A DNA stretch of 64,000 nucleotides from Mytilus californianus (taxonomy: Eukaryota). The stretch is from positions 50,902,001 to 50,966,000 of the forward strand of contig NW_026262712.1 in NCBI RefSeq assembly GCF_021869535.1, in the 5' to 3' direction. Of this stretch, positions 10,651-53,627 are shown one piece after another. The notes beneath the pieces were generated by a model, which was given only the letters and a program-made list of their open reading frames with translations, was not told the origin of the DNA and did not search any database. The translations under genes were made by a program, and so were the position numbers. Positions within the stretch are counted from its first letter, which is position 1, and every line of letters starts with the position of its first letter.

Positions 10651-10914
10651 TTATTTGTATATTCCATAACAAATCCACTCCATTGCTCTAATAGGTGGTA
10701 AAAGTGTAAAAACAAATGTCCGTCAACATCGTTGTTTTCTGTCATATACGCATATGACGTCACATGAAGTACACGATTTTTTCTCGTGACTAAAATATTA
10801 TTTTCATTCCAACTGGATTCCGATGGTTTAACAATATCTTCATAGAAAAAAATTCCCGAATTTTTTTGTCGGATCTTTTTCTGCTGATCTGATATATGAT
10901 ATCACGCAGGACGC
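10651..10914 (-). pseudogene. Orphan, frameshifted copy of hydrolase exon 7
   Basis: Colinear with 36629..36904 (..FTLLPPIRAMEWICYGIYK*). It has a 10-bp deletion (CTAATTTTCT) and a 1-nt loss at the acceptor. No upstream exons follow it. Confidence 0.88.
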
Positions 10915-11269
10915 TGTACAAAATAGACAAGACTCATAAATGCTATGATTTAAGTGTCAAATATATAAACAAGATTCTTTTTGTTAGTAAGAGAGACTTT
11001 TCACGTGATTTATTCATGATCGCTTTATCAACTCTTTAAGGGGTCAGGCGAAAATTGCCTGTTAATATCAAAATGTCCGTTCGTATTCAACATAGTTTTC
11101 CCAGTGGCATTTTAAATATCCCACCCTTCATCCCGTTAACCCACTTTATAACATCATATTGCAATATTCTTATGTAAACAGGCTTGTTATATTTTATTTC
11201 TTTTGTTTCTCATTTCTGACGAAGAAAATCATTTTTATGACAAAGATAAATATAGATTCTACCACTGCT

Positions 11270-19710: not shown

Positions 19711-20410
19711 AGTTACCATCATGTTATTGTTTATTTTGTCAAATAATGTTCATGTAATACTTTAATATATAGAATATAATATAGAGGTGACTACTGCTTC
19801 GTACATCCAAAAGGTAGCATCACACACAAAATAGAAACAATAAATATACCAAAAACAACTTTGTTACAAAGAAACCAAAACGTCGCCAAACTTCTAAAGA
19901 TGATGCAATTCTAAGACGATAAAAAAAAAAGAAAAGGCAGACTAGTTCACTACTCATCACAAACATATACGTTCGTGTCAATTCACACAATACTGAAAAC
20001 TTATATTTGGGGCAAAACGAATTCTTCTAACAAAAGTATACGAATAAGGAGATGGGGTAAGATTGCCAATGAGACAACTATCCACAATAGTCCAAGTGAC
20101 GTGAATGCAAGCAAATATAGTTCACCGTACAGACCTCAGCAATGTGTAAAACCCATACTTTAAAATGCCCTGACATGACAACGTGTGAAATAATTGAAAC
20201 GAGAAAAACAACGGTCCCATTTCTGCCGAATCAATAAACGATAAACAAATATGACGGACACAAAACAACGACAACCACATTGAATTACAGGCTCCTGATT
20301 TTAAGCACTTAAAGAATGTGGCGGTGTTTCACATGTTTGTGTCAAAATCCTAGGTAGGTATAGACAAATGTTTTCATTTTCATCAAATAAAATACAAAAT
20401 TTATTAAAAA

Positions 20411-20493
20411 TTTATTTATTTATTTAATAATAAATCAACTCCATTGCTCTAATATGTTGTAAAAGAGTAAAACAAATGTCCGCCAACATTGTT
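20411..20493 (-). pseudogene. Short remnant of hydrolase exon 7, cut by the insertion starting at ~20496
   Basis: AACTCCATTGCTCTAAT..GTAAAA..AAATGTCCGCC matches 36655-36705. Confidence 0.75.
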
Positions 20494-23823: not shown

Positions 23824-26800
23824 AATCTTACTCATGTTATCGCTTATAATTTCAGGAATTTTTAATGTAATAAACTGTTAATGGAATAAATCAAATCTGA
23901 TAAAGAGGTTACTCAAATTTCTTCGCACACACAGAATGTAACATTAGATTTAGATTGGAAAAAGACAATATAAAAATATTAAACAAAACGTCTGTGTTAC
24001 AATGAGAAACAAAATGTCGAAAACAAAATAGGATAATAGTAATGCAATCCATGACGATCCGAAAAATTGGCCAGCATTTTATCTGAACACAACTCGTCAT
24101 ATATATATACACATACGTTCGTGTATAAATTTACACAGTACTTGATATTTTGACAATACGAACCCTCCTTAAAAAAACATGTAATTTCTATTGCCTTGTG
24201 CCTTTATTTGCAGAAGATCCGTTATTAAGTATAAGAATAAGGAGATTTGGTATGATTGCGAATGAGATATCTAACACCACACTTGTCCAAATGACTCGCG
24301 GACAATACGATATATTCAAACTACTAATATGCATAACATCTATAAACTTTTTATTCACACCCTTTTTAATACAGAAATATATATTTGCTCAAACTTGTTA
24401 GTTTACAAAGCTTAATAGGTCTAGAGTGAGCTATGTTAGTCATTTACTATCATTCTTCTATCCATTTATATGTTCCACCACCAAGAAGGCCGTGACATAT
24501 AGTGTTACCTATGTCCGTCATTCCGACATTTTCAAAAAGTTGTCCGCATTTTTACCTGCCGATGTAGATAATCTTTTTGGTACATGAAAATTATACTTGT
24601 CATGACTTTCTTTGAGTAGCCTGCCGTCCTGCTTTAGCTTCTGCTAGAAGCTATCACCTGCTTGAACTTTCAAATATTATCAATAAAAGCGAGCTCTGTC
24701 CGAAATGTAGAACATTAGAAAAACTAGAAATTAATACACAACTTATAGTGGATGCTAGTGCCTTGCTCTGTAACTGTCAATGTAAATGTGGATGTACAGA
24801 TTTTCTTCATCTTGTAGAATACATAAGTAGAAAACTTTGCTTTGCTTTGCACATTAGACGTTAACAATATTATTAACATTGCCGGTGAATAAAAAGAAAG
24901 GATTGCTTGCAACCACTCAGTCAAAGGCGTGAATATTTAAAATCTAAATTATCTTTTGTTTTAGATTTTAATAGTGTAATAAACATTTAGTGGGTGTTAA
25001 ATACACCATATCCTACTCTGTAACTAGATGTGTGTCTTTGAAAGGCAGGATCTTCACACAAGACAAAACAAGACAATGGCGGCAAAATTAATAAACTATA
25101 ACCCAAAGTTCTCTAATACTTGTAATAAATGACAGCTTGGTCACAAAAATATTGCTTTAAACCATTCGAAATCCTAAGATTTGGCAGTTGTCTTTATCCT
25201 TGTCTTTGACGGGGCAAGGTTGGCATCTCTTGTATTTTGGATTTAGAAATCAAGTACAAAATAAATGTATTGGAGTTAATTATGAATTCTAAGGAAACTC
25301 CTAGTTTCGTGAATGTGCTAACCTAGAGGACATAAAATTTGTTTTGAAAAAGATAAAGTGGATATAAAAAACTCTCAGCCGAGATTTATTTGAATGCGCG
25401 TCGTATCTTGCAATAAGTAATTACAAGTATTACAATTAACTGAAGTAAGTTATCTTTGGGAAACAAATCAGGTATCAAAAAGGAAGAACGGACATAGGCT
25501 AATGAGATATCAACCAAGAGACACAAAAAATCTCGAATAACATGATGTATAATATACGTTTCTTATATTACCGGTTAATAAGTTTAGAAATTATCAATAA
25601 AGTATGGTTCCAACTCCCTCTGAAAAATTTGACCTTAGATAAATTTGCTTATTCTTAGTCGGTCTCTTTTGATGATTTATATTGCTCCTACCGTTTCTAT
25701 GTAGTTAAACATGCCTGGATTTCAAATGTTTGGGTTTGCACTTTCCTGAAGAGGGTATATATAACGCAGGGAATTTATAAAGTGTTATTTTCAAAGAAAA
25801 CAATATGCAGTCACCATGCATACAGTTTCACAAATCAAATTTTAAACCAGAGAAAGCATGAGTGGACATTTTACTTGTTTAAATTCTTAAGGTACACTGA
25901 TGTATAAGGTACGTGTGCATACATGGTGTTATCAAAGAAAACTGGTTCGTTGATTAGAAATCGAGAAGTTTATTTTTTTTCAAGAGGGTAGAAATTAAGT
26001 ATCGTGATGAAACAAGAACTCAATTAAGCACATAGAAGGATGTCAACATTTATCAAATTTGACAAGAAAATACTGCAGTTTATGAATGATTATCGTTTTA
26101 AAAAGGAGAAAATACAAAGAATGCAATCAGAAACAATACCGGTATATCGAAGAAAAACGCATAGCACCACTATGTTGTGTTGCTGATTTTAAGTAAAAAT
26201 CTAGTGAAAAGTCGCATTCGACGATGTCATTAATGCGATAAAGAGGATAGTGGTTGCATGTCCTTAGTTATCTATCACAAATATTCCATAACAGATTATG
26301 ATGAAAAAAAGTTTGTGCAAGATTTCTTCCAACTCTTAATCGATATAGCCCTTTATACATTGGCTTCTTTGTAAGCAGCAATCCCCTATCAATGAAATCA
26401 TAATAAGAAATTAAAGTCCTGGAATAAAGTTTCAATATGGAAATTTTAAAATATGCATGCAGGTTCTGATGAAATGTCAATGCATAGAAATAAAAGTTGT
26501 GTATGTCCTCCATGTACATTATAATGTCTTGTCTCAGAAATATTTTTCTAAAACATTTTTCCATTTCAATTCAACAAATTACTAATTTTAAGTTTAACAT
26601 TTATTTATATATTCCATAATAAATCCACTACAAGTCCTTCAACCTTTAGAAAACTTTCCTACATGTGATGCTAATTTGTTTTCCTGAATATGACTGACTA
26701 ATTTTCCACTCAACAAGGAATCAATAAATCAATCCTAAAATAGATGCGAAAGATACCAGAGGGACATTCAAACTCATAAGTCGAAAATAAACTGACAACT

Positions 26801-36628: not shown

Positions 36629-36904
36629 TTATTTATATATTCCATAATAAATCCACTCCATTGCTCTAATTGGTGGTAAAAGTGTACAAAAAATGTGTCC
36701 GCCAGCATCGTTGTTTTCCGTTATATACGCATATGACGTCACATGAAGTACACGATTATGTCTAGTGACTAAAATATTCTTTTCATTCCAACTAGATTCC
36801 GATGGTATAATAATATCTTCATGGAAAAGAATTCCTGGATTTCTTTTGTCGAATCTTTTTCTAATTTTCTCTGCTGATCTGTTATATGCTATCACGTAGG
36901 ATGC
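36629..36904 (-). CDS. Hydrolase exon 7 (terminal)
   Basis: TTTTTTTACAG|ASYVIAYNRSAEKIRKRF...GGHIFCTLLPPIRAMEWIYYGIYK*; 276 nt including the stop. Confidence 0.9.
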   Translation of the reverse strand, partial: ASYVIAYNRSAEKIRKRFDKRNPGILFHEDIIIPSESSWNEKNILVTRHNRVLHVTSYAYITENNDAGGHIFCTLLPPIRAMEWIYYGIYK

Positions 36905-39900
36905 CTGTAAAAAAAAATACATGAAGCATGAATGTCATGAATGGAGGACAATAAACTACAAAAGACGTTAACTAAAACTCTTCCTCTTTTTTAGGTTTAC
37001 TTTGAATGTAATTTAATCAAATCGTCTTCAAAACTATTGTGTCCTACCTTTTACAAGTAAACAATCTACAGGCAAACTTTCGCGGTAGGGAAACCAAAGT
37101 GATAAAACAAAACGGACGAAGATGACCACAGACAACTACATGTAACATAAAAACAACGCCTTATTCGAGTTTGTACTATCATGGAAAATTGCATGATTGT
37201 ATACAAATTTTTAATTTGCGTGTTTCAATGTATGAAAGTGATTTTCTTTTTAAAAGTCACCTGACTTTAACATTGTCTTTAGAATGCAGCTTTTTTCTTT
37301 AGCTATGGAATATATTTGTTTAAATCGAGATTTTTGCTCCTTTTAAATCTAATTTTTTTTTACCTAATTTTGGAAATTGTATGCTTGAATTCAGAATTGC
37401 ATATACGTGGTGTAGGTGCTTTGCATGAAGCTATGCCACACTGTTTTAGAGTGATTATTGTCATTTCCGTGTATATCTATTGTTAATATTTGTTGTTAGT
37501 GATTAACAGACTTCCATTGGTAGTGTAGTTCACTTGTATTTGTTTGGCGGTTTTGTGAACACTTTGTGATATCATTTCAAGGTTAAGATTGATATGTTTG
37601 GGTTTTTTTCTCGCGGTTTTTTCCACCAGCTAATTTCAGTAATGGATAAAGGAACTGCACATTTTGAAAACAAGATATCGATAATGAAAATGTAAAAGAA
37701 ACACGGAATTGCACTTAAAAGTTTTTTTCATAATTATTCCTGGTAGGGTGCATAGAGTGTTTGGCGGGGATGGGGGAATTGGAGGAATAGCGTTTTTGGT
37801 AACTTTTATTACATGCACATATCTGTGTGCAATTTATAAAAAAAGATGCAAGTTCTTTCTTGTTGGTACGTTGGAACAAAGATATCTTAACATTATACTT
37901 ACGTAATTCAAGTCCTTGCATGTACGTTCTGGAGAATTGTCGTTTTGCGTTATTCCTAGCTTTTTCAAAATTGCATCTCTTCGGAACATCCTTGCATGTA
38001 TCTGTAAAGGTATCTCATCAGAATCTATCTTTTCGACTGGCGTGTCCAGTTGTGAAAATAAGTATATGGTAACTTTTGAAACAGATTCGTTAAAGAGAGC
38101 CGGATTGAATGCTGACTGATATGTGAAATAACTCTCTATCTGAAATAAATTTGTAAAAATACTAATAATTATATAGGTTAAAAAAAACACATTTTAACAG
38201 GATTATTGCATCCCTAGTAGAGTATTGTATATTCTACGAGAGGTTATTATATCTACCGTTATCCGTGCAATAACATAGATTTTATTGTATTGCAACACAA
38301 TGGCAAGAACATATACCAAACGAAAATGTCGTCGGTTTGAAGCGATATTGCATTGCATGTTATACCGGCGAATATTGCACGCCAAGTTTTGGTAACATTC
38401 CATACGGGGAATCTGGGACTTTTATACTAACTGTCAATATATTATGTCCCACTCCCAGAGGGAATATTTTTATTTGCTATGCAAACTTAAATTTTCATCC
38501 TTGACTAGACTGTGAATATGAAAGGAATGCATCTGCTGGTAAAAACAGTAGAATGTCCTTGTTAACTAACTTCAGTAATAGTTGAAAAATCTGAATATCA
38601 TATGAAAAATACATAAATTACTTACATTAATTCGAGTTGAATCTGGACCAACAAGATCTGATAACCACATCTGCGACTGTTTAACCCAGTGCGACTTGTA
38701 TTCTTTTGGGTCTATGGTTATCTGATGGGCTTTCAGTAACGGCTGAAATATGCCATTTGGAATTATTTTAGAATGCTGTTCTCTCTAATTCTGCAGTGTG
38801 CATTAAAATTATTATCCGTTTGATAAATTTTTACATAAACAACACGTTGAAAAAATTTTGCCTCGTGTAAATTTCCGCCAATTCCACTCGGAACAATGTA
38901 CTCGGCTTTTTTCCATTGAATTAGTAGAGAGAGAGATCCACTCAACCCCGTTGGAAGTATTTATCCAAGCTCGATTGTTTAGATTTTAAAGTTTGAATAC
39001 TCTGTATGTTTTTTTATGCGAATTTTTTTTTTCTTTTTTACCTCCCTTTAATTTTTAATGTTGTTGTTTTTTTGTTTTTTTTTTATTAAATGGTCATATT
39101 GATTTGCGTGACAGATTAAAAGGGACTTACACTGTTACACATCTTTTTATTTTGTTAAACACAGCCTTGTGATTTGATTTGATTTTTGGTGTTTTAACGC
39201 CACTATTAAGCACCGCTTTTGGGCTATTTCGTGGCGGCCAGTTTTTATTGGTGTAGGAAGCCGGAGTGCTCGAAGAAAACCACCGACCTTCGATAGGAAA
39301 ACTAACAATCCTAGTCAATTAAGATTGGAGTCGAGTGCACCCGCACGAGCAAGGTTCGAACTCACAACCTCAGTGTTGACTGGCTAGTGGTTACAGTAGT
39401 AACTACTTAGACCACTCGGCCACCGAGGCCCCCTCACAGCCTTGTGTATGCAGAAATTAAACGTTGAGTTCGTTTTTTCGTTTTTTGCCATGACATTGTC
39501 AGTTTGTTTTCAACTTATGAGTTTGAATGTTCCTTTGGTATCTTTCGCCTCTCTTTTTTAACATACTTTTCATTGATAGCCTTTTTAATTTTGAGGATAT
39601 TTTCAGTGAATTGTCATCGTCCATCCTCGAGCTCATCTTAATTCATCTGACAAAACAATTGAACTGAATTCGAATCACTGTGTTCAATACAATATCTCAA
39701 ATTTCTAACTGTTTTGTTGAAATACTGAAAAATGTTCAATGTTTCGTATCATTTTAAGCGGTTTTTTAGAGCGAGACGAAAAAGGGATGAAATCTGAAAA
39801 CTATTGATAATCATGAGTATTTAAATCATACCTCCAAAATTTTGTTAGTTTCTACAAAGTAATCATTCAAAGAATCTAGAACAACTCTACCATTGTCCCC

Positions 39901-42900
39901 TCTACAGTAGAAAAGAAATGTAGAAATTGGTTGCAGAATGTATTGGAGAAGATTTTCATATTCCGTGTCTAAAGTGATGTCCTGTATAAGTAGATGGATA
40001 GGAAGTTGACCATTACTGAATATTCCATGATTAACACCATCTAACACTACCATTGGATAACGGTATTTTAGACTGGGATCAGCTTTTATTTGTTGTAGAA
40101 ACTTTCTGTTTGAAAAATGAATAGATGAAATGATAATTATTATATTAAAGTAAATGGTATTGAGAATTCTTCCAAACATTCAAGTACTTACCAATTACAA
40201 AAAAATGTATTCCTATTTTCCATTTTTTTTTTCTAAAAAGAATCATTTTAATTGCCTTTTTTAGCTCACATCAAATCTTGAGAAGTAAAAATGACCAACA
40301 GTTTAAGGTCTATCTCCTGCAAAATTTTCAGAATAATCGGAAAACCCATTTTGGAGTAATTGCCCCTAAAATGTTTTTTTTTCAAATTTCGCAGTTTTTG
40401 GTTATTATCTTGAAAACTATTACAAATAGAGAGAAATTTTATTTAAACAGTAAAAATGACCAGAACAAGTAAACTTGACAGAAATCATCTAACGATCAGT
40501 TAGGATTGGTTTTTAAATGATGAATTTTAACCTTTTTATGGTTTTTTTATGACAGCTATAGTTGAAATAAAGAATCTTTCGATAGTAAAAACGTTCAACA
40601 AAATCAGATCTACGAATAAGTCAACATGGACAAATGGTCAATTGACCCTTTATTGAGTGTTTGCCCTCAAAAGACTAATTTTACTCATCTTTGCGTTTTT
40701 TTGCAGAAACTATAACAGATAGAGAGAAATTGTAAAGAGCAAAAGTGTTCAGCAAAATAAAATCTACAAATAAGTGAAATTTTCAATTGACTGCTTATAG
40801 GGGTTATTGCCATTGAAAGATGTTTTTTATCAATTTTCTCTTTTTGCAGAAACCATTATACAAATGTAGATAGATGGAAATTGTAAATTACAAAAATGAA
40901 CAGGGCCAAAGTTGTCAACTGCCTCTTTTTAGGAGTTATTACCTCTGAATTACCAATTTTAACCATTTGACGATTTTTGTGGAAACAAAGATAAATAGAT
41001 AACAACATTGTATAGAAAAAATGTTCTGTAAAATAAGATATTATACAAATAAAACAACATTGTTGAAATTGTCAATTGACCCCTGAAAGGAGTAATTGTC
41101 CATGAAAGATGTTGGTTTTTTCTTCATTTTTGCAGTTTTAGCACAAACTATAATAGATAGAGAGAAAAAGAAAAAAGGCAAAAATGTTCAGCACAATACA
41201 ATCTACAAAATCAGTCACCATGGCCGAAATTGGCAACCAGCTCGATATGGAAGTTGTTTCCCCTGAATGATGAAATTTTTATCCATTTTTAAATTTTTTT
41301 GTAACTATAGGAGTTAGAGAGAAAATTTGAAAAGTAAAAAAGATTAGCAAGATACCAATCTACAGGTAAGTCAACATGGTCAAATTATCACAATAGTTAA
41401 ACAGGATTTATTGCCATTAAATGACGTTTTTATTTCAAAAACTTTAATCATTATAAACTGTAAACATTAAAGAGTAAAGAAGATCATCAATACAAGACCT
41501 ACAAAAATGCCACCAAAAAAAGATCTACATATAAGCAAAAATAACTGACTGCAATATTTAAAAGGGGAAAAAATAAATATCAAAATGGCATATTTTTTTA
41601 CCAAGTGAGCGATTCAGGCTAATGAGATCCTCTTGTTTCTTTTTCTTTTTCTGATTTTTACTGATTTTAGTTTTTGATCCCTTTTGAATTGCGTGTTTTA
41701 TTAAATATAGAAATTTTTTAGGAGTTTGGAACAAATTGTAGTTAAGAAAATCGCAAGCCCCCAAAAAAGTCAATGGCATTCCTTATAGCGCTGAGTGTCG
41801 CAGTGAAAAACGCTCTTTTATCTCCCCGAACTACAAGCATTTCATGCGTGGAATATGTGGAAACCAACGATTTATTATGAAAACCTAAATATATGGGAAT
41901 ATTTAATTTCTTATTAATGTATTTCTCTTCCGGTGGTACTCTATTTTATATTATAAATATAAAGGAAACTTATTTTGTACATTTTATGGAATGTCTTGCG
42001 AAAAACGAAGTAGAAAAGAACACGTTCTTAATTAAATATTATGTAATCTTTTATAAACACAACGTACAAAAACATTAATTTAATGACAAGAACACGCTTT
42101 CGAAAACGATAAACTATTTATGATATATTAGTTATGTATGATTTATCTATATTCCTTTCGTTTCATCTTCAGGGAACTAACAACCGAGCACAAAGACATG
42201 ATCATGAAGAGGACTTGAAATGCATTTTTCAAAACCAAGTGTATGCATACTTTGTTTTCCGCAAATGTTATAAATCATGTGGTCTGATGTTTTTCTTGCA
42301 AACTTTGCGTTTAAAAATAGCAATGAAAATTCCTTTGCATTACGGATAAATGTGTGCAATTTTGAATTTTTCGCCGATCGCTCCCCAAGAAAAGATTTAA
42401 AGAGTTTGTATTGTTTTATTCGGGATTTCAAAAACACATGTAAACCAATCAATCAGACGACAGAACTTCTTTCCTATAAAATATAAGGTCAATGTCATAA
42501 TTTTTTAAATTTGTTTGTATGAGGTTTAGAAACTGGGAAAGGGCGAGATTTACCAAGTCCTTCGATAGTTCCGTGTCGAATACAAAAAAAGTTGATAATT
42601 TTTCTGACATTGATCAATATTGTTTTTATATTGCATGTAAACATCGCTTCAATTATGGTTATAAATATGTTTACACAAAAATAAAATATTCTCCATCTCT
42701 AAACGAGCCCCAAATTGTAAAGAAACCGAAGTGACTCGACATGAAATTGACATCGCACGAAATATCACTTTGTTACTTTCTTTGGTCAATAAAGACAACA
42801 GGAAGTGTTCTAGTTGCGATATAATTCTTGAAATTGAAAACGAAAAAGATCAGAAATACAATACAATGTAGCTGTGTTTATATTTATTCAGATAAGGAAT

Positions 42901-45900
42901 TGCATAGCTATTTTCAAAAGAGGTGTATTATCTAATATGAACGTTTGAAACAGATTTGGTAACTGCTTTAGCGAGAAAAGATAATAAGTAAAATAGAGAA
43001 TGGAAACGGGGATTGAGTCAAAGAGACAACAACCCGACCAAAGAGCAGAATAAGACCTATTTGAGTCAATTCAATTTTCATTTCCGTATAGCTGTCTAAT
43101 ATAGGTATTCTTGATTAACTCACTTGTAAACATTAGCTAGTGTTGTGATTTTTGTTAATCCGTCTAAATTCCCAATAACAGTCATTGTAGGTACATTCAA
43201 CTGCAATAATATCTTGTCTGACATAACATGAGTCCCAAGTAGTATAATTCCGCTTACTACGTCTGGGTATTCTGACACAAACTGTTGAATTAACGATCCT
43301 AAAGAGAGAGAGAAAAACATGGTATTACTGTATCAAAATAGATGGCAACTTTAACGTGATTGCAACATAAGTAGAGTGCTCGAAGCAACACAATCTTATT
43401 AAAATACAGCTCCTGTGTTCAAGCTTTGCTTACAAGGATCTGTCAAACTCCGCTTTACTTTCTGTTCTGTTGATTATTACATCAGCCAATGAAAATCCAG
43501 CCTTCAAATATTTGAAGGTGTGTATTAATCTAAAAAAAACAACAGAGGATCCCGAAAGGTCTTTAGAACAGAAAGTAGATTTGAGCATTTTCAGATCCTT
43601 GTAAGCAAAGCTTGGGACAGGATCTGTATTTCAATGAGATTTGAAGCAACATGAACGAAGAATTGAAACTCCGAAGGACAAGACAAGATGATCTACAAAC
43701 CAATAGTCTATAATTATTATCATCGACAAATAACTAAAACAATCAGGAAAAAACATATAAAGGTTAAATTTAGATAATTATGGCGAACGATAAAAAAAAA
43801 TCCAATCAAATGTTACCCTCTTCTTATGAATATTTACTTGGCATGTCTTGTATCTATTTGTTAAATCTTTCGCTCTCCTATTTTTTGGCACATAGGATTA
43901 AAAGAAGTTCATTCTGAAAGTTGGTTTAAACTTTCAATTTAAATATATATATATTAGTCACAGGTATCTTGTATTGAAAAGAAAGTGGTCATAGGTTTCT
44001 CCTCTAGAAGATGGTAAAGAGGCCGGCTAGGTATGTGTTCAAAGTCTATGTAGATCGGTCCACTTGTAATTTTATCGATATAAGGAATCTTAGTGTCATT
44101 GGTAGCACATGGTCAGAAGCGATGTCGTGTTATATGTAATAGCCAAAGATTTTACATGTTTGTGCGTAAACCCCGAGCCCATCAACTTGTCCTTGACCTA
44201 TTTCACAAGAAGAACCCCACATGGAAAAACAGTCGTAAGTCATTACATTTATTTTTGCAATCAGATCGATCAGATTGGTAATTCTGGTTAAAGAAAAATC
44301 CAAAAGAACAATAGTCGTACTTCATCGCTGTGCCTTTTCATTATAACATTGGAGATATATAATTTGAACCGTATTCTTGAGTAACTTTATTGATTTTGTT
44401 AAAACAAATATGCATTACAATTCAGTGTTTGTTTCTGTTCTCTTTTTTAAATTCGCTTAGAGAGTTTATCTTGCTATATTTTCATTCGATAAAGCTATTT
44501 AAAAAAATAGCTCTTGCTACCACAAGTACAAGGAATAGTAAATAACACTAAATCTTATGATACTATACAATTACAATTATAGCCTTTGTATGAGGTCGAT
44601 ACGAGGATATATCGACCTGAAAGAAGTATATTGACTGAGGACGCAGTCCGATGTCGACATATCCTCGTATCGACCTCATAGAAAGGCTACAATTTTTATA
44701 GCATTATTGTCAATAGCACCAATTCATTTGTTTTGTTGTTTCGATTGTGTCAGATATTCTAAAAACAACCGTGCAATATCACTTTAATATCTGCTGGTTA
44801 CAGTCTATCTTTGAAAATATAGTTGAACATGTGACTCTTTCTAAACGAATCAAATTAGTTATAATATTCACGATAATAATATAAATGTATATAAAAGAAA
44901 TCAGACTGAACATTTATCAACTCAGCGATGGACCAAATTGTTAAACTTGAAGTGGATACGGTATTGGTGTGGTCGATACAACATTCCCCAAAATGCAAAC
45001 AGCTATCTACCAATGCAAGGGAACACGGTTTTTAGTGCTTTATTTTATCTTATATATGATAATGGCTCTTAAATTGTTGTATCTTCATGATTTTTACTAT
45101 TAAGGTATATTTTTTTGTATTATTTATGGGAGATCTGTGAAAGTCTATGTAAGATGCTTACAGCTTTTCTAAACTGCATGTGGTTTAGAGCTTGACATAT
45201 GTATACGCTATATTGACTTGTAAATGTGCTCTCATTTACGCCCGGGATTCTGTCAATGACGTTAGAATGATGTAAATGGCGTTGGGATGCTGTCAATGAC
45301 GTTGGATTATTGTCAATGATGTTGGATTATTGTCAATTGCGTTTGGATGCTGTCAGTGGCGTTTAGATGCTGTCATAACGTTGGGATGCCATCAGTGACG
45401 TTTAGGGTGCTGTCAATGATATCGGGATGCGGTCACTTTCGAAAGGGATGCTGTCACTGATGATTTGCAAAAGGGATGCTTTCAGAAACGTTAAAGTGCT
45501 GGCAATGACGTTTGAATGCTTTCATTGGCATTTGTCAATGGCGTATAACCAATATTTCCTTTAATGCATACTTCAAATTTTTATATCGTCCTGAACATGC
45601 ATGAAATATTTGCTACTGGACGTTAAGCAACCAACAATCAATCAATTTAATTTTTATTTGTTAAGGACACGTAAATTGTGAAGTTATTATATTGGTATAT
45701 CGGATACAATTTTTAACGTTAGAAATACCAGACTGGCCATGTCCACCAAGAATTATTTGTACTTTTCCAGTGGTCTTCTTTAAACGGTACACCTCTGTGT
45801 TGATCATATCGACCAGTCGTAAAACGTCTGTAACCTCATAATATGTTCCTCTTTTGTCTTCAATGATACCTATCCATAACTGTAGTGGACAGAATGTCTG

Positions 45901-48211
45901 GATAGCGGTGCCTATAAAAAATATAACAAAGAGAATTACCTACCATAATTGTAGTGGACAGAATGTCTGGATAGCGGTGCCTATAAAAAATATAACAAAG
46001 AGAATTACCTACCATAATTGTAGTGGACAGAATGTCTGGATAGCGGTGCCTATAAAAAATATAACAAAGAAAATTACCATCCATAACTGTAGTGGAGAGA
46101 ATGTCTGGATAGCGGTGCCTATAAAAATTATAACAAAGAGAATAACCTATCCATAATTGTAGTTGAAAGGGTGTCTGGATAACGGTACCTATAAAAAAAT
46201 ATAACAAAGATAATTACCGATAGTCGTATGTTCGAAAATTAAAACCGCCGTAATTCATCGATTGGATCGAAGTTTATAATACCCCTGCTTAAAATGAGTA
46301 GGGTTGTACTGGTTTTTCGATGTTCGTCCATCACACATTTCTAGCGAATTCTTACTCATAGACTACAAATAATATCTTCATAATATTTAGTTGAAGATAT
46401 TTCGTGTGACATTATATAAATAACACATAGCTGAGAGGATGATAGAGCAGATTGTTACCCCGAGAAAACATTGTCAACTGAGGCGAAGTCAAGGTTGATA
46501 ATGTCTTTTCGAGGGGTAATAATCTGCTCTATCACCCTCTCAGATATGTATTATTTAATTTATTATACTGAATGTTCTGTCTTTAAATTTCAAATGCAAA
46601 GTCATAAACTATGTCGTTTTATACATAACAATCATCCGTATTTATTAAAGCGCACACTTGAGCAAGCGTCTCCGCGAAGGGTAATATGGTATTTGCCATG
46701 GGAAAGAGTAAATTGTCTCCCTCGTATTAACTAATCAAAATCTGGCATTTTGACATGAAGTATAATAAAGTAAATTGTCTCCCTTGTATTAACCAATCAA
46801 AATCTGGCATTTTGACGTGAAGTATATTAAAGTAAATTATCTCCCTCGTATTAACCATTCAAAATCTGGCATTTTGACATGAAGTATATTAATAATATTA
46901 TGTTATTCTGGACCTTCACGTGGGATATTACTAGTTAAAAAGTGTGCTAGCTATTGACCTTATACAAAAATACGGGGTCAGTATATTCCATACGGGACAA
47001 GAGCTCATGTGAAGCCCGAATAACAATGATATTATATTGGAGTGTCCTAATTTCAACATAAGTGACAATTCTGATCTTCATTTTTTTTGTTCACAGGATA
47101 AATGGGTTCATATACTCTGTCACGATAACCAATCAAATTGCAGGACTAGCCGGGATTATTCATACCAGTATATTATCCATCATTTTTATATGTCCTATAT
47201 ATGTCGCACATGTTCTTTACTTGATGCATGAATAAATAAATTTGGTGTATTTACTGTCTTCTGATTGGTTAAAAGTATTACCCTTATTTTCAATGTTGTC
47301 AATTTTTATGGCGACACGCCCACTCTGACGTTGTGTATTCATACGCCAACATGTGTGTACGTTGTTATTGTTAATATAAATAATATAAAAAGCTCTTTGA
47401 GCCTTATATTTGATAGAAATTTATTCATAATGAATGACAATAATTTATTTTGAATTTATTGAACCATAAAATTAATTTTTGACTCTTCACATTTAACATA
47501 ATCCGCTTCGCGGATTATTCAATGTGAAGAGTCAAAAATTAATTTTATGGTTCAATAAATTCAAAATAAATAATAGTCATTCATTAAATAAAATAAATGA
47601 GATTCAACATATAAGCGTTGATTCTTTCAAAAGATATCATGAGCCTGGAGGGCTACGTTTTAGGGTTTGTTTTCTTAATCAGTGCAAGGAGGTTGTATAT
47701 AACCTCTTTGATCAGTGGAACTTATGAATACCGTTTAATGAATAAACATGATTATGTTCAATGTAAAAGAGAATATATCCTAAATAGCTCACTCACACTA
47801 GATATAAAGCTTATAAGCTTTAATATGATTTTTGGATATTTTACATGAATATATGACTTAAATAAACTGAAAACAGAGTATTCCTCTGAAATTTTAGTAA
47901 GCAACGATTAGTCATTCAAACTTGAATAAGATAATCAACTTTCAACTGTATTTTTAAACACGGCGTAAAAACCCGGAAAGAAAATAATGCTATAAAGCGC
48001 GAATACAATGCATGGTTTGGTTAAAGTGCACTATATAAATTAGAAAAAAATATATCTATTTACCTAAGGATTTGTAAGCTTCAGCTGGAACGTCTTCCTC
48101 GGGAAATAAAATGAAAAGTACGGCGTCACCTCCATGTTTTTTTGCTGTCAGAATTCTATGGCTGACGACAAGAGGCAGAATTATTCCAAACACTAACAGT
48201 ATGAATTGCAT
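36629..48211 (-). CDS. Secreted alpha/beta-hydrolase-fold protein (Abhydrolase_5-like), 7 exons, 469 aa, probable pseudoenzyme
   Basis: Exons 48064-48211, 45729-45911, 43124-43298, 39832-40105, 38626-38742, 37903-38139, 36629-36904 total 1410 nt. All introns are GT-AG with matching phases (1,1,2,0,0,0) and the frame stays open. Motifs: LWIG, GGHGQSG, GNLDG, GVNH, C-terminal CTLLPPIRAMEWIY. Confidence 0.9.
37903..38139 (-). CDS. Hydrolase exon 6
   Basis: TTATTTCAG|IESYFTYQSAFNP...PERTCKDLNY|GTAAGT; 237 nt. Confidence 0.9.
38626..38742 (-). CDS. Hydrolase exon 5
   Basis: ATATTTCAG|PLLKAHQITIDPKEYKSHWVKQSQMWLSDLVGPDSTRIN|GTAAGT; 117 nt. Confidence 0.88.
39172..39434 (-). mobile_element. Full-length tRNA-derived SINE with a 12-bp target-site duplication
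   Basis: Reverse complement begins GGGGCCTCGGTGGCCGAGTGG (A box) and has GTTCGAAC (B box), a GGTCGGTGGTTTTCT..ACTCCGG.TTCCT core and an (AAATC)n tail. CACAGCCTTGTG flanks it at 39160-39171 and 39435-39446. Confidence 0.92.
39832..40105 (-). CDS. Hydrolase exon 4 (His, GVNH)
   Basis: TTTCAAACAG|A AAG: KFLQQIKADPSLKYRYPMVVLDGVNHGIFSNG...NKILE|GTATGA; 274 nt. Confidence 0.92.
40257..41637 (+). mobile_element. Helentron/HINE-like element with degenerate internal ~165-bp repeats
   Basis: Starts TTTTTAGCTCAC and ends CAAGTGAGCGATTCAGGCT..CCTCTTGTT (subterminal inverted repeat plus 3' end). GTCAATTGAC(C/T) motifs recur internally. Confidence 0.6.
43124..43298 (-). CDS. Hydrolase exon 3 (acid residue, GNLDG)
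   Basis: CTCTCTTTAG|GA TCG: SLIQQFVSEYPDVVSGIILLGTH...GNLDGLTKITTLANVY(K)|GTGAGT; 175 nt. Confidence 0.92.
43391..43642. mobile_element. 252-bp MITE with ~80-bp TIRs and a 9-bp TSD (Mutator-like signature)
   Basis: CAATCTTATTAAAATACAG..CTTTGCTTACAAGGATCTG..TTTCTGTTCT is mirrored at 43565-43642. GAAGCAACA flanks it at 43382-43390 and 43643-43651. Confidence 0.85.
44577..44693. repeat. Foldback hairpin (~36-bp arms)
   Basis: AGCCTTTGTATGAGGTCGATACGAGGATATATCGAC ... GTCGACATATCCTCGTATCGACCTCATAGAAAGGCT. Confidence 0.85.
45241..45545 (+). repeat. Degenerate ~20-bp minisatellite (GGATGCTGTCAATGACGTT)
   Basis: More than a dozen diverged copies in hydrolase intron 2. Confidence 0.8.
45729..45911 (-). 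CDS. Hydrolase exon 2 (nucleophile-elbow strand)
   Basis: TTTTTATAG|GC ACC: TAIQTFCPLQLWIGIIEDKRGTYYEVTDVLRLVDMINTEVYRLKKTTGKVQIILGGHGQS(G)|GTATTT; 183 nt, phase 1-1. Confidence 0.88.
45868..46218 (-). repeat. Five tandem 69/70-bp units, each = intron-1 3' splice site + first 37-42 nt of exon 2
   Basis: CCATAA anchors at 45874, 45943, 46012, 46081 and 46151. AG| positions at 45911, 45980, 46049, 46118 and 46188. Confidence 0.95.
46431..47586. mobile_element. Probable composite non-autonomous element bounded by two foldback hairpins (46431..46543, 47429..47586), with an internal 62-bp x3 array (46707..46891)
   Basis: Both hairpins are directly visible, with GAGGCGAAGTCAAGG and CCGCTTCGCGG cores. 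AGTAAATT starts at 46707, 46769 and 46831. Treating them as one element is inference. Confidence 0.55.
48064..48211 (-). CDS. Hydrolase exon 1 (signal peptide)
   Basis: MQFILLVFGIILPLVVSHRILTAKKHGGDAVLFILFPEEDVPAEAYKSL(G), ending TTAG|GTAAAT, phase 1. Not in the ORF track (<60 aa). Confidence 0.88.
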
Positions 48212-50499
48212 TTTATTTGTTATATATAATTTCACATTTTTCTAATGCATTGTTTGCTGAAGAAAGATATACGCTAATCGATTCCTTGTGTTATAGTTTA
48301 CTTTACTGGATGTAATGACAAATGCCAGTGATTCTGAATAAACAGTAAATAATAGTGATGAATAATAGTATAATAGCTCGATTAACAATATTGTAGAATG
48401 AAGGATTATAGAATGATGTTCCACTTGCTGTGTTTTTCCTCAATGCATCACGGTTAAAATGGGCTATCTGTAAACTTCGAAAAATATCACAGCGGCTGTC
48501 GATGGCGAATGTGAAATAAAACCGCCTTTTCAATCAGAAAATAATCCAGATGCATTGCTCTTTTTAAATTGTATTTCATGTAAAAGAAACTTTTAAAAAT
48601 CCTCACAAGTTCATATTAGTATTGAATCAATGCGAAAAATGTAAATAAAGAATTTTTAAACTCTCTCGTGTTTTCATACAAGTACTCCGTTCCTATATCA
48701 AAGAAAAACTGAGTTCAATAGTCTTGTAAGCTTCCGAGAGTTACCGAGGGCAAAGCGTAATATCTACATCATAATTTACTATTAGAAAGTTGCATAACCT
48801 AACATTATGAGAAATCACAGTATCATTGTCGGAAAGTAATGGCCATACTTTTAATCTGATGATAGTCTGAGTACAAGAGAGGAAAATGTCAATTGTGATG
48901 AGGGCCATTAACTAATATTACACAGTATTATTTCTGACATATCATAAGTTGAAAACGTATATCTATCATAAAATAATTCAAACATACTATTATTAAAACT
49001 ACAAACGAGACGCCCTTTCACTTGAGTGTCTTCCTCTAGGGTGTTCGGTATAAAGTTTGAAAAATATCAATTAGAAGTGTCCATTTCCGTTCAAAGTTCT
49101 TGATTTAAGATAAATATCTTTGTATCTTCCAATAAAACGGATGTTTAATTGAATACTCTTAACCACATGAACCGTGAATTTGTATGGGAAATAATAATAA
49201 GAGGTGACAAAAGTCTCGTTTGAATTACTGTCTAAAAATCTAAATTATGATACATTCGATACTTCAGCGTGTCCGGTTCCATCACAGACTCTCATGCATT
49301 TCCGATTTCTAGATTATGTCAATTAATCGTTTTACCCCTATAAACCAAACTGAAAATATATAGCGAATATATATAATTATATGCTGTAACTTTTATTTAA
49401 TAATAAAGAAAGGACTCAAAACCTTGAGGGTATCTTCGCCATGTAAGCTTACTTATATTGTCAACAAAATTACTATTGTTGATAGAAAATACAATTTACG
49501 CGTCATTTAATGATGTGTTTATTAGAATACTATATGAAGATGGTAAGATAGACAGAATCATAGGTGAAGAAACGGGGTTAACATTTCATGTTACTCTGAC
49601 AGCTCAAGATCATGCATAATTGTATAAGCTTTGCAGTACGTCAGTTTTTACGATTCATGTTTGAAAAACGGATGCATTGTTAACATCATGACATAATAAA
49701 GTCATAAGCGCCTAAACATATACTTTTGAAAGGATCTAGGAGGTGGTCATCAAAAGTTGAGGGATAAAGTTTTGTGTTTGTCGACGTTTATTCTTACAAT
49801 CAAGAGGTTGCACTGATTTTACTGTATGAATTAATGCCACATTAAGTTTTACAAAATTGCGATTGCCATGGCGCCTTTGAATGAAGTCAAATGTGACAAA
49901 AGATTTTTTTCCTCTAAAAATATGAATACTCTTGGCCACTGTCGTGAATTGCTGAAATTTTTTAAGCGTAAATTTTTCACAAGACAACTGGTTACTATTT
50001 TTACGTTTTGAAATGCAAAAGTTCTGTCGGATTCTAGCTCCTTCCACCTGTTTTGAAACCCAATTAAAAACAACTCAATTGTTTTAACTCTGTAACTCTT
50101 AACTATTTCTTCACAAACAGAAGCATAAAGTTTTGATGCAGAAGGAAACGGTATTACATTTATACGTTAAGCTTCAATTAGATTAGACAGTAATTTTGCA
50201 ATGGATGAAATCCAATTTTCATCAACCATTCTTACTAAAGCCTGGCAAATTTGGCCCGACTAACAAAGGAAGCTGTCTTTTTTCATAAAAAGGTGTATGT
50301 CATCAGACAAAGATTACGATACCACAGTTTTAGCTTGTCAGATCGACCTTATTTTATTCTTATAGGTGGCGATGTGAGAGACATGTGTCCTCTTTAATTA
50401 GATATGTGCATTAAAACCCAGCTAAATTCACTTGTGCTACGAATAGTCGTATTAATTTTTCGTTTTATTTCCCTCAAGACAAAAAAAGTGCCTTGAATT

Positions 50500-51929: not shown

Positions 51930-53627
51930 TTAGAAATAATAGTTCTGCTCACTAAACATTGCAAACTCTGTGAAATTAGTGGACTGAGGACGAAATCTTT
52001 TCCTTGACTGGTCTCTTTGTTCTTGAACCAGCTGTACATGTGGTGCATATTCTGGGAATTTTTCGAGGAAATAGTTTGGTACTTGACGCTTTCTATTATT
52101 TGCTCTGCTCCTCTTGTTGGCAAACCACGACTTGACCTGAGGTACTGTTATTCCTGTTGTAATGGCTAGCATTTCTTTTTCTTTCTCTGATGGGTATGGA
52201 TTAGTGATGTGTTGCTGGTACCAACCATTCAAGGTTTCTCTGGATTTACCGTCAAGTTGGCTGTACGTATTACCATTATCCGTGTCTTTCTTCTTTCCGG
52301 TTAGCTTATTCTTAATCGGGTGTTTGTTTCCAGTGATGGATAGAGTATTAAAGCAACGAACTCTTTTGTTTGCCATCCATTTCTTCACCTGTTTGGTATA
52401 AAGGTTTGTAATGTTTGCTAGTTCTTCTACTTCTTTATCGTTTGGGTAGGGATACGTCACGTGAGCATCATACCATTCTGTCAGTATCCGTGTAGCTTCT
52501 GGTTTAATCTGGCGTGGCCTTGACAAACATCTATCAGTGTTCGGTTTCTTCGGTTGTTGGTCAGATGTAAGGCGACTTTCTTCTTCAAATTTGCGCTTTA
52601 GTGATAGTCGTCTTGGCGAATTAGTTCTCTGGTCAGTATTTGGTGGTGATACCTGCTTGCATTGCATGTAATCCTGTCGAGGTAAATCGAATGATTCCAA
52701 TACATTTGAAATATGTACTGAAGTGGTTGCACCAAACTGCTGATACAAGTCTGTACTTTCAGGGAGAACATCGGCAGCTTCCATAGCTAAGCTGAGTACG
52801 TCTATGTCCTGAATGGGTAAAGTCGAATCACTTGATGAAAAACTGGTAGATGCTGATTCATATGAAGCACTAGAGTTGATAGTTCTTTTTGCAGTTTGTT
52901 TGTGTTGTTTTGTTGTGGTTTCTAGTAACACAAGTTCTTCAAGATTACGTTTGGTGTCTTCTATCAGCTGAAATCGACAATGGTCAAATCTGTCATGAAT
53001 AAAATGAGAGTGTTCTTGTGTGGAGCTGACTTCTATATATCTGGCAACTTCCATTGTGCTTACCTCTTTGGAATATCTACATTCAATGTCTCGAGCTTTT
53101 GTCACAACTTGACAGTTCTGTTGAGATCTGAGTTGTAGGAATCTCTTCTGAAGATTTAGGTGAGCAGAATGAATATTTGAACTTCGACCAACAGCACTGT
53201 TCTTAGAATCCCACTTGACATTCATTAAGTTTGTTGGTACCTGCATATGAAGACATTCTTCTGCTAACAACTTTGACAAGTCTTTAAACATTGAGTTTTG
53301 TTGCAAGTTTTGTAAATAATTTTCTTTATTATTGTACAACGGTTTCAATTGCTGTCCATCAGTGAGTAGTCGTCTGCGAGTCTGTTTGCTGCTGATGTTG
53401 TTTCCATGGAAGCAGGTGAAAGGTTGTGCTGTAACAAGGGGATCATTTGGTTTCCTGTTGAAGATGGATATTCCTGTTACCGGTGACATGCTATTGAGTT
53501 TGTTTTCAGATAACAACAGTAGAGACGGTGACAGAAACTGGAGAAAATCTGGCGTGGAAATCTCTGATTGGTCGTGGCTACGATCCTCTCCAAACTGGAA
53601 CACGTGGTTCTTGTATGGGGTCTCCAT
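51930..53627 (-). CDS. TALE-class homeobox protein with two homeodomains (565 aa, intronless ORF), likely a spiralian-specific TALE/SPILE-type gene
   Basis: HD1 RPRQIKPEATRILTEWYDAHVTYPYP...QVKKWMANKRVR (~52345-52520) and HD2 ...LNGWYQQHITNPYP...QVKSWFANKRSR (~52100-52270). Both have the three-amino-acid loop extension with PYP and Ala at position 50. Confidence 0.93.
   Translation of the reverse strand: METPYKNHVFQFGEDRSHDQSEISTPDFLQFLSPSLLLLSENKLNSMSPVTGISIFNRKPNDPLVTAQPFTCFHGNNISSKQTRRRLLTDGQQLKPLYNNKENYLQNLQQNSMFKDLSKLLAEECLHMQVPTNLMNVKWDSKNSAVGRSSNIHSAHLNLQKRFLQLRSQQNCQVVTKARDIECRYSKEVSTMEVARYIEVSSTQEHSHFIHDRFDHCRFQLIEDTKRNLEELVLLETTTKQHKQTAKRTINSSASYESASTSFSSSDSTLPIQDIDVLSLAMEAADVLPESTDLYQQFGATTSVHISNVLESFDLPRQDYMQCKQVSPPNTDQRTNSPRRLSLKRKFEEESRLTSDQQPKKPNTDRCLSRPRQIKPEATRILTEWYDAHVTYPYPNDKEVEELANITNLYTKQVKKWMANKRVRCFNTLSITGNKHPIKNKLTGKKKDTDNGNTYSQLDGKSRETLNGWYQQHITNPYPSEKEKEMLAITTGITVPQVKSWFANKRSRANNRKRQVPNYFLEKFPEYAPHVQLVQEQRDQSRKRFRPQSTNFTEFAMFSEQNYYF

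What the first reader, a model, noticed from the sequence alone, without database searches (positions are those of the whole stretch)
36629..48211. Intact secreted alpha/beta-hydrolase that appears to have lost its catalytic serine (candidate pseudoenzyme)
Seen: the hand-spliced 469-aa ORF is uninterrupted and has a signal peptide. At the exon 2/3 junction the elbow reads IILGGHGQSGSLIQ. Established: alpha/beta-hydrolases carry G-x-S-x-G (typically GHSLGG) here, with downstream Asp and His. Seen: the Asp (GNLDG) and His (GVNH) motifs are retained, the Ser position is Gly (a Ser sits two residues later), and the expected oxyanion-hole PG reads PEE (LFPEEDVP). Inference: a non-catalytic, possibly ligand-binding or decoy secreted protein kept under selection beside an immune-type TRIM array. 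Most of it is invisible to the ORF track.
Basis: partly seen in the sequence, partly recalled or inferred. Interest (0 to 1): 0.72.

Follow-up and report, generated by a model that had tools for sequence, protein, structure and literature searches.

The report
Serine-less secreted esterase-like mussel protein
A mussel gene encodes an expressed, evolutionarily conserved secreted protein that keeps an esterase fold but has lost the catalytic serine, so it adds one more case to the known class of "dead enzymes" reused for another job.

Summary
A 7-exon minus-strand gene (CDS 48211..36629, all GT-AG) encodes an uninterrupted 469-aa protein. It differs at 3 residues from RefSeq XP_052066106.1 of Mytilus californianus. 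RNA from four studies uses exactly the exon 1/2 and 2/3 junctions that give IILGGHGQSGSLIQ, and no alternative exon 2 appears.

The oyster homologue reads AGHSLGG, with the same phase-1 intron in the Gly codon just after the motif. Forty of 48 family members have Ser where the mussel has G108. The conserved oxyanion-loop Gly is E38. D156 and H195 are kept. A good AlphaFold model (pLDDT 82.6) puts G108 at the strand-helix elbow and S110 two residues into the helix. The closest structure is the active esterase AroC (9eh6, Z 20.4).

The gene is not decaying. dN/dS is 0.10-0.21 among four Mytilus species. An intact orthologue only 62% identical, with synonymous sites saturated, keeps the same GGHGQSG elbow. 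The Pfam-less C-terminal domain, with its invariant RAMEW motif, is the most constrained part.

Verdict: a genuine candidate pseudoenzyme, a new member of a known kind. Loss of activity and any binding role are inferred, not shown. The scan noted a different Ser-less esterase-fold gene elsewhere in this genome (s1-333298).

The parts
48064..48211 (-). Exon 1: start codon, hydrophobic N-terminus (probable signal peptide) and strand beta3 with the altered oxyanion loop F-P-E38-E39-D (E38 codon GAG at 48100-48098).
   Evidence: The joint 45910>48063 is seen in RNA. The family column at residue 38 is Gly in 36 of 48 sequences.
45729..45911 (-). Exon 2: helix A, beta4, helix B, beta5 and the elbow G105 G106 H107 G108 Q109 S110. 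The G108 codon GGC is at 45738-45736 and the S110 codon TCT at 45732-45730. The last base, 45729, is the first base of the split G111 codon.
43124..43298 (-). Exon 3: the rest of G111, helix C, beta6 and beta7, with the acid residue D156 (GAC at 43164-43162) in GNLDG.
   Evidence: The joint 43297>45728 is seen in RNA. Asp fills this column in 45 of 48 family members.
39832..40105 (-). Exon 4: GVNHG with H195 (CAT at 40029-40027), and the start of the helical linker.
   Evidence: His fills this column in 48 of 48 family members.
38626..38742 (-). Exon 5 (39 aa): the start of the C-terminal domain.
37903..38139 (-). Exon 6: C-terminal domain, including the invariant C373.
36629..36904 (-). Exon 7: the end of the C-terminal domain with the family-invariant C451-x-L-L-x-P-x-R-A-M-E-W-x-Y motif, and the stop codon at 36631-36629.
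45867..46218 (.). A 69-nt x 5 tandem repeat in intron 1 whose last copy supplies the exon 2 acceptor that is actually used (exon start 45911). The upstream copies are unused look-alike acceptors.
   Evidence: In RNA only the joint 45910>48063 is seen.

Best explanation
This is a real, expressed and selectively maintained Mytilus gene for a secreted two-domain protein. Residues ~18-255 form an alpha/beta-hydrolase domain of the Abhydrolase_5 ('fold-5') type. Residues ~258-469 form a conserved domain that is in neither Pfam nor the PDB. It carries an invariant Cys pair and the motif C-x-L-L-x-P-x-R-A-M-E-W-x-Y.

In the mussel lineage the hydrolase domain lost the nucleophile (GHSLGG became GHGQSG, so Ser became G108). 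It also lost the small oxyanion-loop residues ([PQ]-G-A became P-E-E). Asp156 and His195 were kept.

Shown: the splice model, expression, positional homology of G108 with the family's Ser, the fold, purifying selection, and an ancient origin of the change.

Inferred: without a nucleophile at the elbow apex and with a remodelled oxyanion loop, it cannot perform classical acyl-enzyme ester hydrolysis. It most likely acts non-catalytically. The old substrate pocket would serve as a binding site, or the hydrolase domain would serve as a scaffold for the more strongly constrained C-terminal domain.
For: Splice model and expression:
- All sites are GT-AG and the ORF is 469 aa.
- Both junctions are seen in stranded raw reads and in transcript contigs from 4 studies, with no other joint and no variant letters in the elbow codons.

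Positional homology:
- The oyster gene reads GGA CAC AGT CTG GGG G|gt. The intron splits the Gly codon after the elbow in the same phase as in the mussel.
- In a 48-sequence alignment the nucleophile column holds S in 40, G in 4 and a gap in 4. D156 is kept in 45 of 48 and H195 in 48 of 48. The E38 column is G in 36.
- A family profile matches 9eh6 over GGHSLGG...LDGL at E 1.4e-5.

Structure:
- The AlphaFold model has pLDDT 82.6 and pTM 0.83. Strand 100-107 is followed by helix 109-120, so G108 is the elbow apex and S110 is at Nu+2.
- The best match is the active esterase AroC, 9eh6: Foldseek E 1.4e-9; VIA Z 20.4 with rmsd 2.6 A over 193 residues (activity reported in PMC12177695).

Selection:
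- dN/dS is 0.10-0.21 overall (Fisher p from 1e-6 to 1e-20). It is 0.14-0.41 for residues 1-260 and 0.04-0.10 for residues 261-469.
- The G108 codon varies synonymously, GGC versus GGA.
- L091 is an intact 7-exon orthologue of 476 aa, 62% identical, with dS about 2. It keeps IILGGHGQSG and FP-Q-V-D.
- The Mytilus stem branch is long, 3.06 against 1.58 substitutions per site for the oyster.
Against: - No biochemical test exists, so loss of activity is inferred from sequence and fold.
- His195 and Asp156 are retained here and in the other Ser-less branches of the family (L077/L078, L082/L083). The derived S110 is itself conserved over a saturated-dS divergence. Both facts would also fit a surviving or changed catalytic function.
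[quoted passage not shown] It also notes that a nucleophile-free alpha/beta-fold enzyme exists (MKS1, GHALG) (PMC3531081).
- Model coordinates could not be read, so the S110-H195 distance was not measured.
- No ligand or partner is known.
- The signal peptide was not tested with a predictor.
Confidence: 0.62

Rival explanations
1. The nucleophile has moved. S110, in a G-Q-S-G-S pentapeptide that formally fits sm-x-Ser-x-sm, serves as the nucleophile with H195 and D156, so the protein is still a serine hydrolase.
For: G108-Q109-S110-G111-S112 fits G-x-S-x-[GAS]. S110 is derived (the family column is G in 42 of 48) yet conserved in all Mytilus species and in the 62%-identical orthologue L091. 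H195 and D156 are retained.
Against: The alignment from the elbow onward is ungapped and the intron position is the same as in the oyster, so there is no 2-residue register shift. The model starts helix C at residue 109, which puts S110 inside the first helical turn rather than at the strained apex. The oxyanion-loop Gly is also replaced. Position 112 is Thr in L091, which weakens the pentapeptide.
Confidence: 0.1
2. It is still an enzyme, but with nucleophile-independent chemistry. The His-Asp pair would act as a general base, as in alpha/beta-fold decarboxylases, lyases or cofactor-free oxygenases.
For: His is invariant and Asp nearly invariant across the family, including at least two independent Ser-less branches. 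The modified elbow is strongly conserved. PMC3531081 documents MKS1, an active alpha/beta-fold decarboxylase with Ala at the nucleophile position.
Against: [quoted passage not shown] The hydrolase half evolves 2-5 times faster at non-synonymous sites than the C-terminal half. The stem branch is very long, which fits relaxed constraint on the old active site.
Confidence: 0.15
3. It is a young pseudogene or an annotation or splicing artefact with no function.
For: The Pfam Abhydrolase_5 score is below the gathering cut-off (25.4 against 27). Relic fragments of the last exon are scattered nearby.
Against: The 469-476 aa ORF is intact in M. californianus, M. coruscus, M. galloprovincialis, M. edulis, M. 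trossulus and a far more distant relative. dN/dS is far below 1, with Fisher p down to 1e-20. Correctly spliced RNA is seen in four studies.
Confidence: 0.03

Closest known systems
[quoted passage not shown]
   Same: Same fold: VIA Z 20.4, rmsd 2.6 A over 193 residues, and Foldseek E 1.4e-9. The family profile matches over GGHSLGG...G-x-LDGL at E 1.4e-5. The Asp and His positions are equivalent.
   Different: AroC is a 230-aa single-domain bacterial enzyme with a Ser nucleophile and measured pNP-butyrate activity (PMC12177695). The mussel protein has Gly at that position and Glu at the oxyanion-loop Gly. It also has a signal-peptide-like N-terminus and an extra ~210-aa C-terminal domain. Sequence identity is only about 16%.
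Oyster orthologue group (Crassostrea/Magallana XP_011440327 / XP_052719460.1, 'Alpha/beta hydrolase fold-5 domain-containing protein') and plankton metatranscriptome homologues L012-L090
   Same: Same two-domain architecture. The oyster gene also shares the intron positions and phases that could be checked, those flanking the exon after the elbow. The C-terminal RAMEW motif is shared, and so are Asp and His. The oyster is sister to Mytilus in the tree, with SH-aLRT 98.
   Different: These proteins keep [GA]-H-S-[LM]-G and [PQ]-G-A, so they are presumably active. Identity to the mussel protein is 20-28%. None has a known function.
Known non-catalytic alpha/beta-hydrolase-fold proteins (neuroligins, glutactin, neurotactin, the thyroglobulin C-terminal domain) listed by ESTHER (PMC3531081)
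   Same: Same principle: the fold is retained, the nucleophile is lost, the protein is secreted or on the cell surface, and it is kept under selection. His is often still present.
   Different: Those belong to the carboxylesterase type-B/cholinesterase block. This protein belongs to the fold-5 block and has its own C-terminal domain. No Pfam COesterase match was found. Partners are known for neuroligins and none is known here.

Membership tests
alpha/beta-hydrolase fold superfamily | Central mostly parallel beta-sheet flanked by helices, with a strand-turn-helix 'nucleophile elbow' after beta5 | tested here: met
   The AlphaFold model has pLDDT 82.6, with strand 100-107, residue 108, then helix 109-120. 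VIA finds 436 chains at Z>=8, and every one of the 50 listed matches is an alpha/beta-fold hydrolase or a protein of that fold; the best is 9eh6 at Z 20.4.
Pfam Abhydrolase_5 (PF12695) | Score at or above the curated gathering cut-off (27 bits) | tested here: not met
   The mussel protein scores 25.4 bits (E 1.4e-5). The oyster homologue scores 38.6 bits, and 28 of 49 family members match at E <= 0.01. It is a divergent relative rather than a clean member by Pfam's rule.
Catalytically competent serine alpha/beta-hydrolase | Ser (or Cys/Asp) nucleophile at the elbow apex within sm-x-Nu-x-sm | tested here: not met
   G108 occupies the column that holds Ser in 40 of 48 homologues. The intron in the Gly codon after the elbow is shared with the oyster.
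Catalytically competent serine alpha/beta-hydrolase | Oxyanion-hole loop after beta3 with a small residue (Gly in this family) | tested here: not met
   E38 and E39 stand where the family has G (36 of 48) and A (32 of 48). L091 has Q-V at these positions.
Catalytically competent serine alpha/beta-hydrolase | Acid residue and His of the triad | tested here: met
   D156 (family 45 of 48 D) and H195 (48 of 48 H).
Catalytically competent serine alpha/beta-hydrolase | Measurable hydrolytic activity or probe labelling | not testable with these tools
   This needs recombinant protein.
Pseudoenzyme (non-catalytic alpha/beta-hydrolase-fold protein) | Fold kept, key catalytic residue lost, gene expressed and under purifying selection | tested here: met
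Pseudoenzyme (non-catalytic alpha/beta-hydrolase-fold protein) | Demonstrated absence of catalysis and a demonstrated non-catalytic role | not testable with these tools
Two-domain 'fold-5 + RAMEW' family (unnamed) | C-terminal ~210-aa domain with invariant C373, C451, P456 and R-A-M-E-W (458-462) | tested here: met
   These columns are invariant in the 49-sequence alignment A5. The domain matches no Pfam family and no PDB sequence.

The most novel reading that the evidence does not exclude
The conserved job of this whole eukaryotic secreted family may not be ester hydrolysis. The invariant His-Asp pair and the unknown C-terminal RAMEW domain would carry a function that tolerates loss of the Ser nucleophile. 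That would explain why Ser was lost at least twice independently (mussels, and the plankton clade L077/L078/L082/L083). It would also explain why the mussel's rebuilt elbow GGHGQSG has stayed frozen across a divergence at which synonymous sites are saturated. Under this reading the mussel protein is a re-tooled enzyme or receptor rather than a dead one.
Probability: 0.15. Interest if true: 0.65.

Novelty: new member of a known kind. Interest (0 to 1): 0.4.

Why it matters
Dead-enzyme derivatives of alpha/beta-hydrolases, such as the neuroligins, show how binding pockets are reused for adhesion and signalling. This case adds a well-documented example from a different branch of the fold (fold-5), in an ecologically and commercially important animal.

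The evolutionary frame is clear. The ancestral state is canonical. The loss is old. The derived elbow is conserved. The non-hydrolase domain is under stronger constraint than the hydrolase domain.

The work also exposes an uncharacterised secreted two-domain family. It occurs in bivalves and in environmental transcript contigs that look like marine eukaryotic plankton. Its C-terminal domain is absent from Pfam and the PDB. The active oyster protein and the Ser-less mussel protein form a natural pair for testing what that family does.

Tried and rejected
- **Alternative splice giving GHSLG.** The polypyrimidine tract before exon 3 reads S-L-S-L-G in the exon frame, but there is no AG or GT to use it. 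It is not conserved in M. trossulus, and RNA shows only the annotated joint. Rejected as coincidence.
- **Alternative elbow exon.** No GHSxG-coding frame lies within the gene span. The only two hits, at 54756 and 56937, are outside the gene.
- **Compensated frameshift.** The 8-mer CAGTCTGG is shared with the oyster at a +4 offset, which could mean a 4-nt insertion plus a 4-G contraction turning S-L-G into G-Q-S. Six point substitutions on a very long branch explain it equally well, and no intermediate species was available. Left open as a curiosity.
- **Scans of single exons.** Pfam and NCBIfam gave almost nothing.
- **Word search with the exon 2 ORF.** No candidates.
- **AlphaFold with a 6-sequence alignment.** It failed, with pLDDT 35. 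The 49-sequence alignment fixed this.
- **Bacterial and archaeal genomes.** No relatives by the two family patterns scanned (the RAMEW motif and the beta3 loop).
- **Canonical paralogue in mytilids.** Exact look-ups of P0007 and of an L073 ORF found nothing. Whether Mytilus also has an oyster-like paralogue stays open. Contig L073, from the same assembly as orthologue fragment L011, carries two oyster-like last exons.
- **Synteny of L091 with the window's homeobox neighbour.** Not detectable in the flanks held.
- **C-terminal domain fold.** Structural hits cover only residues ~13-260.
- **Model coordinates.** These are not exposed, so triad distances were not measured.
Full report
**Gene model.** The region holds one minus-strand gene.
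- Reading the frames and splice sites gave six obvious exons.
- A phmmer search with exon 4 against 1.84 billion representatives returned a 469-aa Mytilus coruscus protein (P0001). That protein revealed an upstream acceptor for exon 2 and a 39-aa exon 5.
- The final model is E1 48211..48064, E2 45911..45729, E3 43298..43124, E4 40105..39832, E5 38742..38626, E6 38139..37903 and E7 36904..36629.
- All introns are GT-AG. The CDS is 1410 nt, giving 469 aa with no internal stop.
- It differs at three C-terminal residues from RefSeq XP_052066106.1 (LOC127705798, Mytilus californianus). At those three sites the window carries the residue found in the other species. The window is therefore M. californianus or a very close relative.

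**RNA evidence.** Twenty of the 24 runs listed held part of the stretch, most of them about a tenth of the sampled words. Four runs from four studies were laid on window 43050-48300.
- The joints 43297>45728 (E3/E2) and 45910>48063 (E2/E1) both carry CT..AC ends, which is GT..AG on the minus strand.
- They occur in raw stranded RNA reads of the same species label (7 and 15 reads, first mate only on the + strand over exons).
- They also occur in single transcript contigs of 1.3-2.2 kb in the three other runs.
- No other joint lands in an exon, none uses the four upstream copies of the repeated acceptor, and no variant letters fall in the elbow codons.
- The refutation 'a different exon 2 that supplies GHSxG' therefore fails. 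No GHSxG-coding frame exists within the gene span.

**Which residue is the lost nucleophile.** Three independent lines point to G108.
- Sequence: a weak phmmer alignment to cinnamoyl esterase, and a significant profile match to PDB 9eh6 (E 1.4e-5). Both align GGH-G108-Q-S-G with G-H-S-x-G-G. The cinnamoyl-esterase alignment then runs ungapped through helix C to the YPD motif.
- Gene structure: an oyster contig (L001) and Crassostrea angulata LOC128191438 (P0017, 27% identical, same two-domain length) read ...GCT GGA CAC AGT CTG GGG G|gt. The intron splits the Gly codon after the elbow in the same phase as in the mussel, and the next intron is also in the same phase.
- Family: one metagenome scan returned 80 loci, mostly 1.6-2.1 kb intron-free transcript contigs. 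Their origin is not recorded. They look like eukaryotic plankton transcripts, which is an inference. In a 48-sequence alignment the nucleophile column is Ser in 40, Gly in 4 (two Mytilus, plus L077 and L078) and a gap in 4 (two of them rows that lack this N-terminal part).
  - The residue before it is His in 45.
  - The Nu+2 column is Gly in 42, where the mussel has S110.
  - D156 is Asp in 45 and H195 is His in all 48.
  - The beta3 loop is [PQ]-G-A where the mussel has P37-E38-E39.

**Structure.**
- With only six sequences AlphaFold failed, with pLDDT 35.
- The 49-sequence alignment A5 had P0013 as target, which differs from the window protein at three residues outside the hydrolase domain. 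It gave pLDDT 82.6 and pTM 0.83.
- DSSP shows strand 100-107, residue 108, then helix 109-120. G108 sits at the elbow apex and S110 lies in the first turn of helix C.
- Foldseek and VIA-align both rank AroC (9eh6) first: E 1.4e-9; Z 20.4, rmsd 2.6 A over 193 residues, model residues 18-237. Next come chlorophyllase, PETases and cutinases, feruloyl esterases and dienelactone hydrolases.
- AroC is a fold-5 esterase with measured activity on pNP-butyrate (PMC12177695).
- Coordinates are not exposed, so the S110-H195 distance could not be measured.

**Selection and age.**
- The CDSs of M. galloprovincialis (L006), M. trossulus (L007) and M. coruscus (an mRNA contig, L008) were recovered. They translate exactly to the database proteins and have the same seven exons.
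- Pairwise dN/dS is 0.10-0.21. Fisher tests of non-synonymous against synonymous changes give p from 1.6e-6 to 2e-20.
- The hydrolase half (residues 1-260) has omega 0.14-0.41. The C-terminal half has 0.04-0.10. Non-synonymous counts differ between the halves at p 0.014-0.0002.
- The elbow amino acids are identical in all species, and the G108 codon varies synonymously, GGC versus GGA.
- A 684-kb contig of an unidentified relative (L091, ENA ERZ21930238, GC 0.345) carries an intact seven-exon orthologue of 476 aa. It is 62% identical to the window protein, with dS about 2 (saturated) and dN 0.27.
  - Its elbow is IILGGHGQSG-T-LVQQFVSEYP, within the longest conserved stretch of the N-terminal half.
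  - Its beta3 loop is F-P-Q-V-D, and GNIDG and GVNHG are kept.
- The loss is therefore old, and the rebuilt elbow is itself constrained.
- In a maximum-likelihood tree Mytilus is sister to the oyster (SH-aLRT 98) on a very long stem, 3.06 against 1.58 substitutions per site. The 'no Ser' state needs three changes on the tree, and at least two are forced by well-supported branches.

**The rest of the protein.**
- Residues 258-469 are the most conserved part. Invariant across 49 sequences are C373, N377, A384, C451, P456 and R-A-M-E-W (458-462).
- No Pfam family matches this part in any member. A 45-sequence profile finds no PDB sequence.
- No bacterial or archaeal genome carries the family by the two patterns scanned, the RAMEW motif and the beta3 loop.
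- The fold of this domain was not tested alone.

**Interpretation.**
- The gene is neither an artefact nor a decaying pseudogene.
- It cannot run the classical acyl-enzyme mechanism, because the apex residue is Gly and the oxyanion loop is remodelled.
- The most likely reading (0.62) is a non-catalytic secreted protein. It would reuse the hydrolase scaffold or pocket, and its main constraint lies in the C-terminal domain.
- Two rivals keep catalysis, and biochemistry or coordinates would separate them:
  - Nucleophile migration to S110 (0.10). The unshifted register and the helix position argue against it.
  - Nucleophile-free His-Asp chemistry (0.15). It is allowed by the retention of His and Asp in all Ser-less branches and by the precedent of MKS1. 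It is weakened by ESTHER's remark that His is often kept in non-catalytic members (PMC3531081).

**Comparison with what is known.**
- Non-catalytic alpha/beta-fold proteins are an established class that includes neuroligins, glutactin and thyroglobulin (PMC3531081). This is a new member of that known kind, from the fold-5 branch.
- The family itself is uncharacterised. Database names are 'uncharacterized protein' or 'Alpha/beta hydrolase fold-5 domain-containing protein'.
- Another first-stage note in this genome reports an unrelated carboxylesterase-fold gene with GHGAG (s1-333298). Ser-less esterase folds are therefore not rare here.
- The B-box/beta-propeller ORF at 17992-19710 and the double TALE homeobox gene at 51930-53627 are neighbours only. 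They say nothing about function.

**Limits.**
- The spliced window protein has no reference id. P0013 (3 differences) stood in for it in the family scans, alignments and fold prediction, while the exact window protein was used inside scripts.

Noticed in passing
window 45867-46218: A 69-nt x 5.1 tandem repeat duplicates the exon 2 acceptor plus the first ~42 nt of exon 2. In four RNA runs only the copy nearest the exon body (exon start 45911) is spliced to exon 1. No joint to the four upstream copies reached the reporting threshold.
   Followed up: partly
window 10628-10948, 20383-20493, 26232-26632, 659-1054: Relic copies of the gene's last exon and/or 3'UTR lie in the 36 kb beyond its 3' end. 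The copy at 10628-10948 is 84% identical in DNA and covers residues 393-469, with a frameshift at residue 451. The copies are spaced as if carried along by repeated segmental duplication of the neighbouring gene array.
   Followed up: partly
window 43299-45728 (intron 2): Intron 2 is 2430 nt here but only 553 nt in M. galloprovincialis and 543 nt in M. trossulus. It contains a 20/40/60-nt tandem array at 45244-45419. A ~62-nt element at 45585-45646 has very high RNA depth on both strands and many loose ends, so it is a dispersed, highly transcribed repeat rather than part of this gene.
   Followed up: no
window 45729-45744 versus L001 808-823 and L058: Canonical molluscs read GGA CAC AGT CTG GG(G/C) G|gt, while mussels read GGA CAT GGC CAG TCT G|gt. 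The 8-mer CAGTCTGG is shared at a +4 offset. A 4-nt insertion plus a 4-G contraction (a compensated frameshift) could have turned S-L-G into G-Q-S. This could not be distinguished from six point substitutions.
   Followed up: partly
L073 (JYMV01052073.1) 1125-1403 and 3119-3418; L011 (JYMV01043308.1): One assembly holds both the Ser-less lineage's last exon (L011, 67% identical to Mytilus) and two oyster-like last exons 2 kb apart (40-44% identical to the oyster, 31-34% to Mytilus). A canonical paralogue may therefore coexist with the Ser-less gene in mytilid-like genomes.
   Followed up: partly
L077, L078, L082, L083 (metatranscriptome contigs): Another clade of the family, of unidentified origin, has also lost the elbow Ser (AHGK, AHGN, AH-GG, SH-GA) and the [PQ]-G-A loop. 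It keeps Asp, His and the C-terminal RAMEW motif.
   Followed up: partly
window 17992-19710 (+) and 51930-53627 (-): There are two intronless neighbours. One is a 572-aa B-box plus SGL/NHL-like beta-propeller ORF, TRIM-like but with no RING hit. The other is a 565-aa protein with two TALE (Homeobox_KN) homeodomains.
   Followed up: partly
window residues 417, 424, 450 of the protein (exon 7): The window allele has W417, V424 and F450, like all other Mytilus species. The RefSeq M. californianus protein has S, A and C at these sites. The reference individual therefore carries three derived changes clustered in the most conserved domain, or it contains errors there.
   Followed up: no
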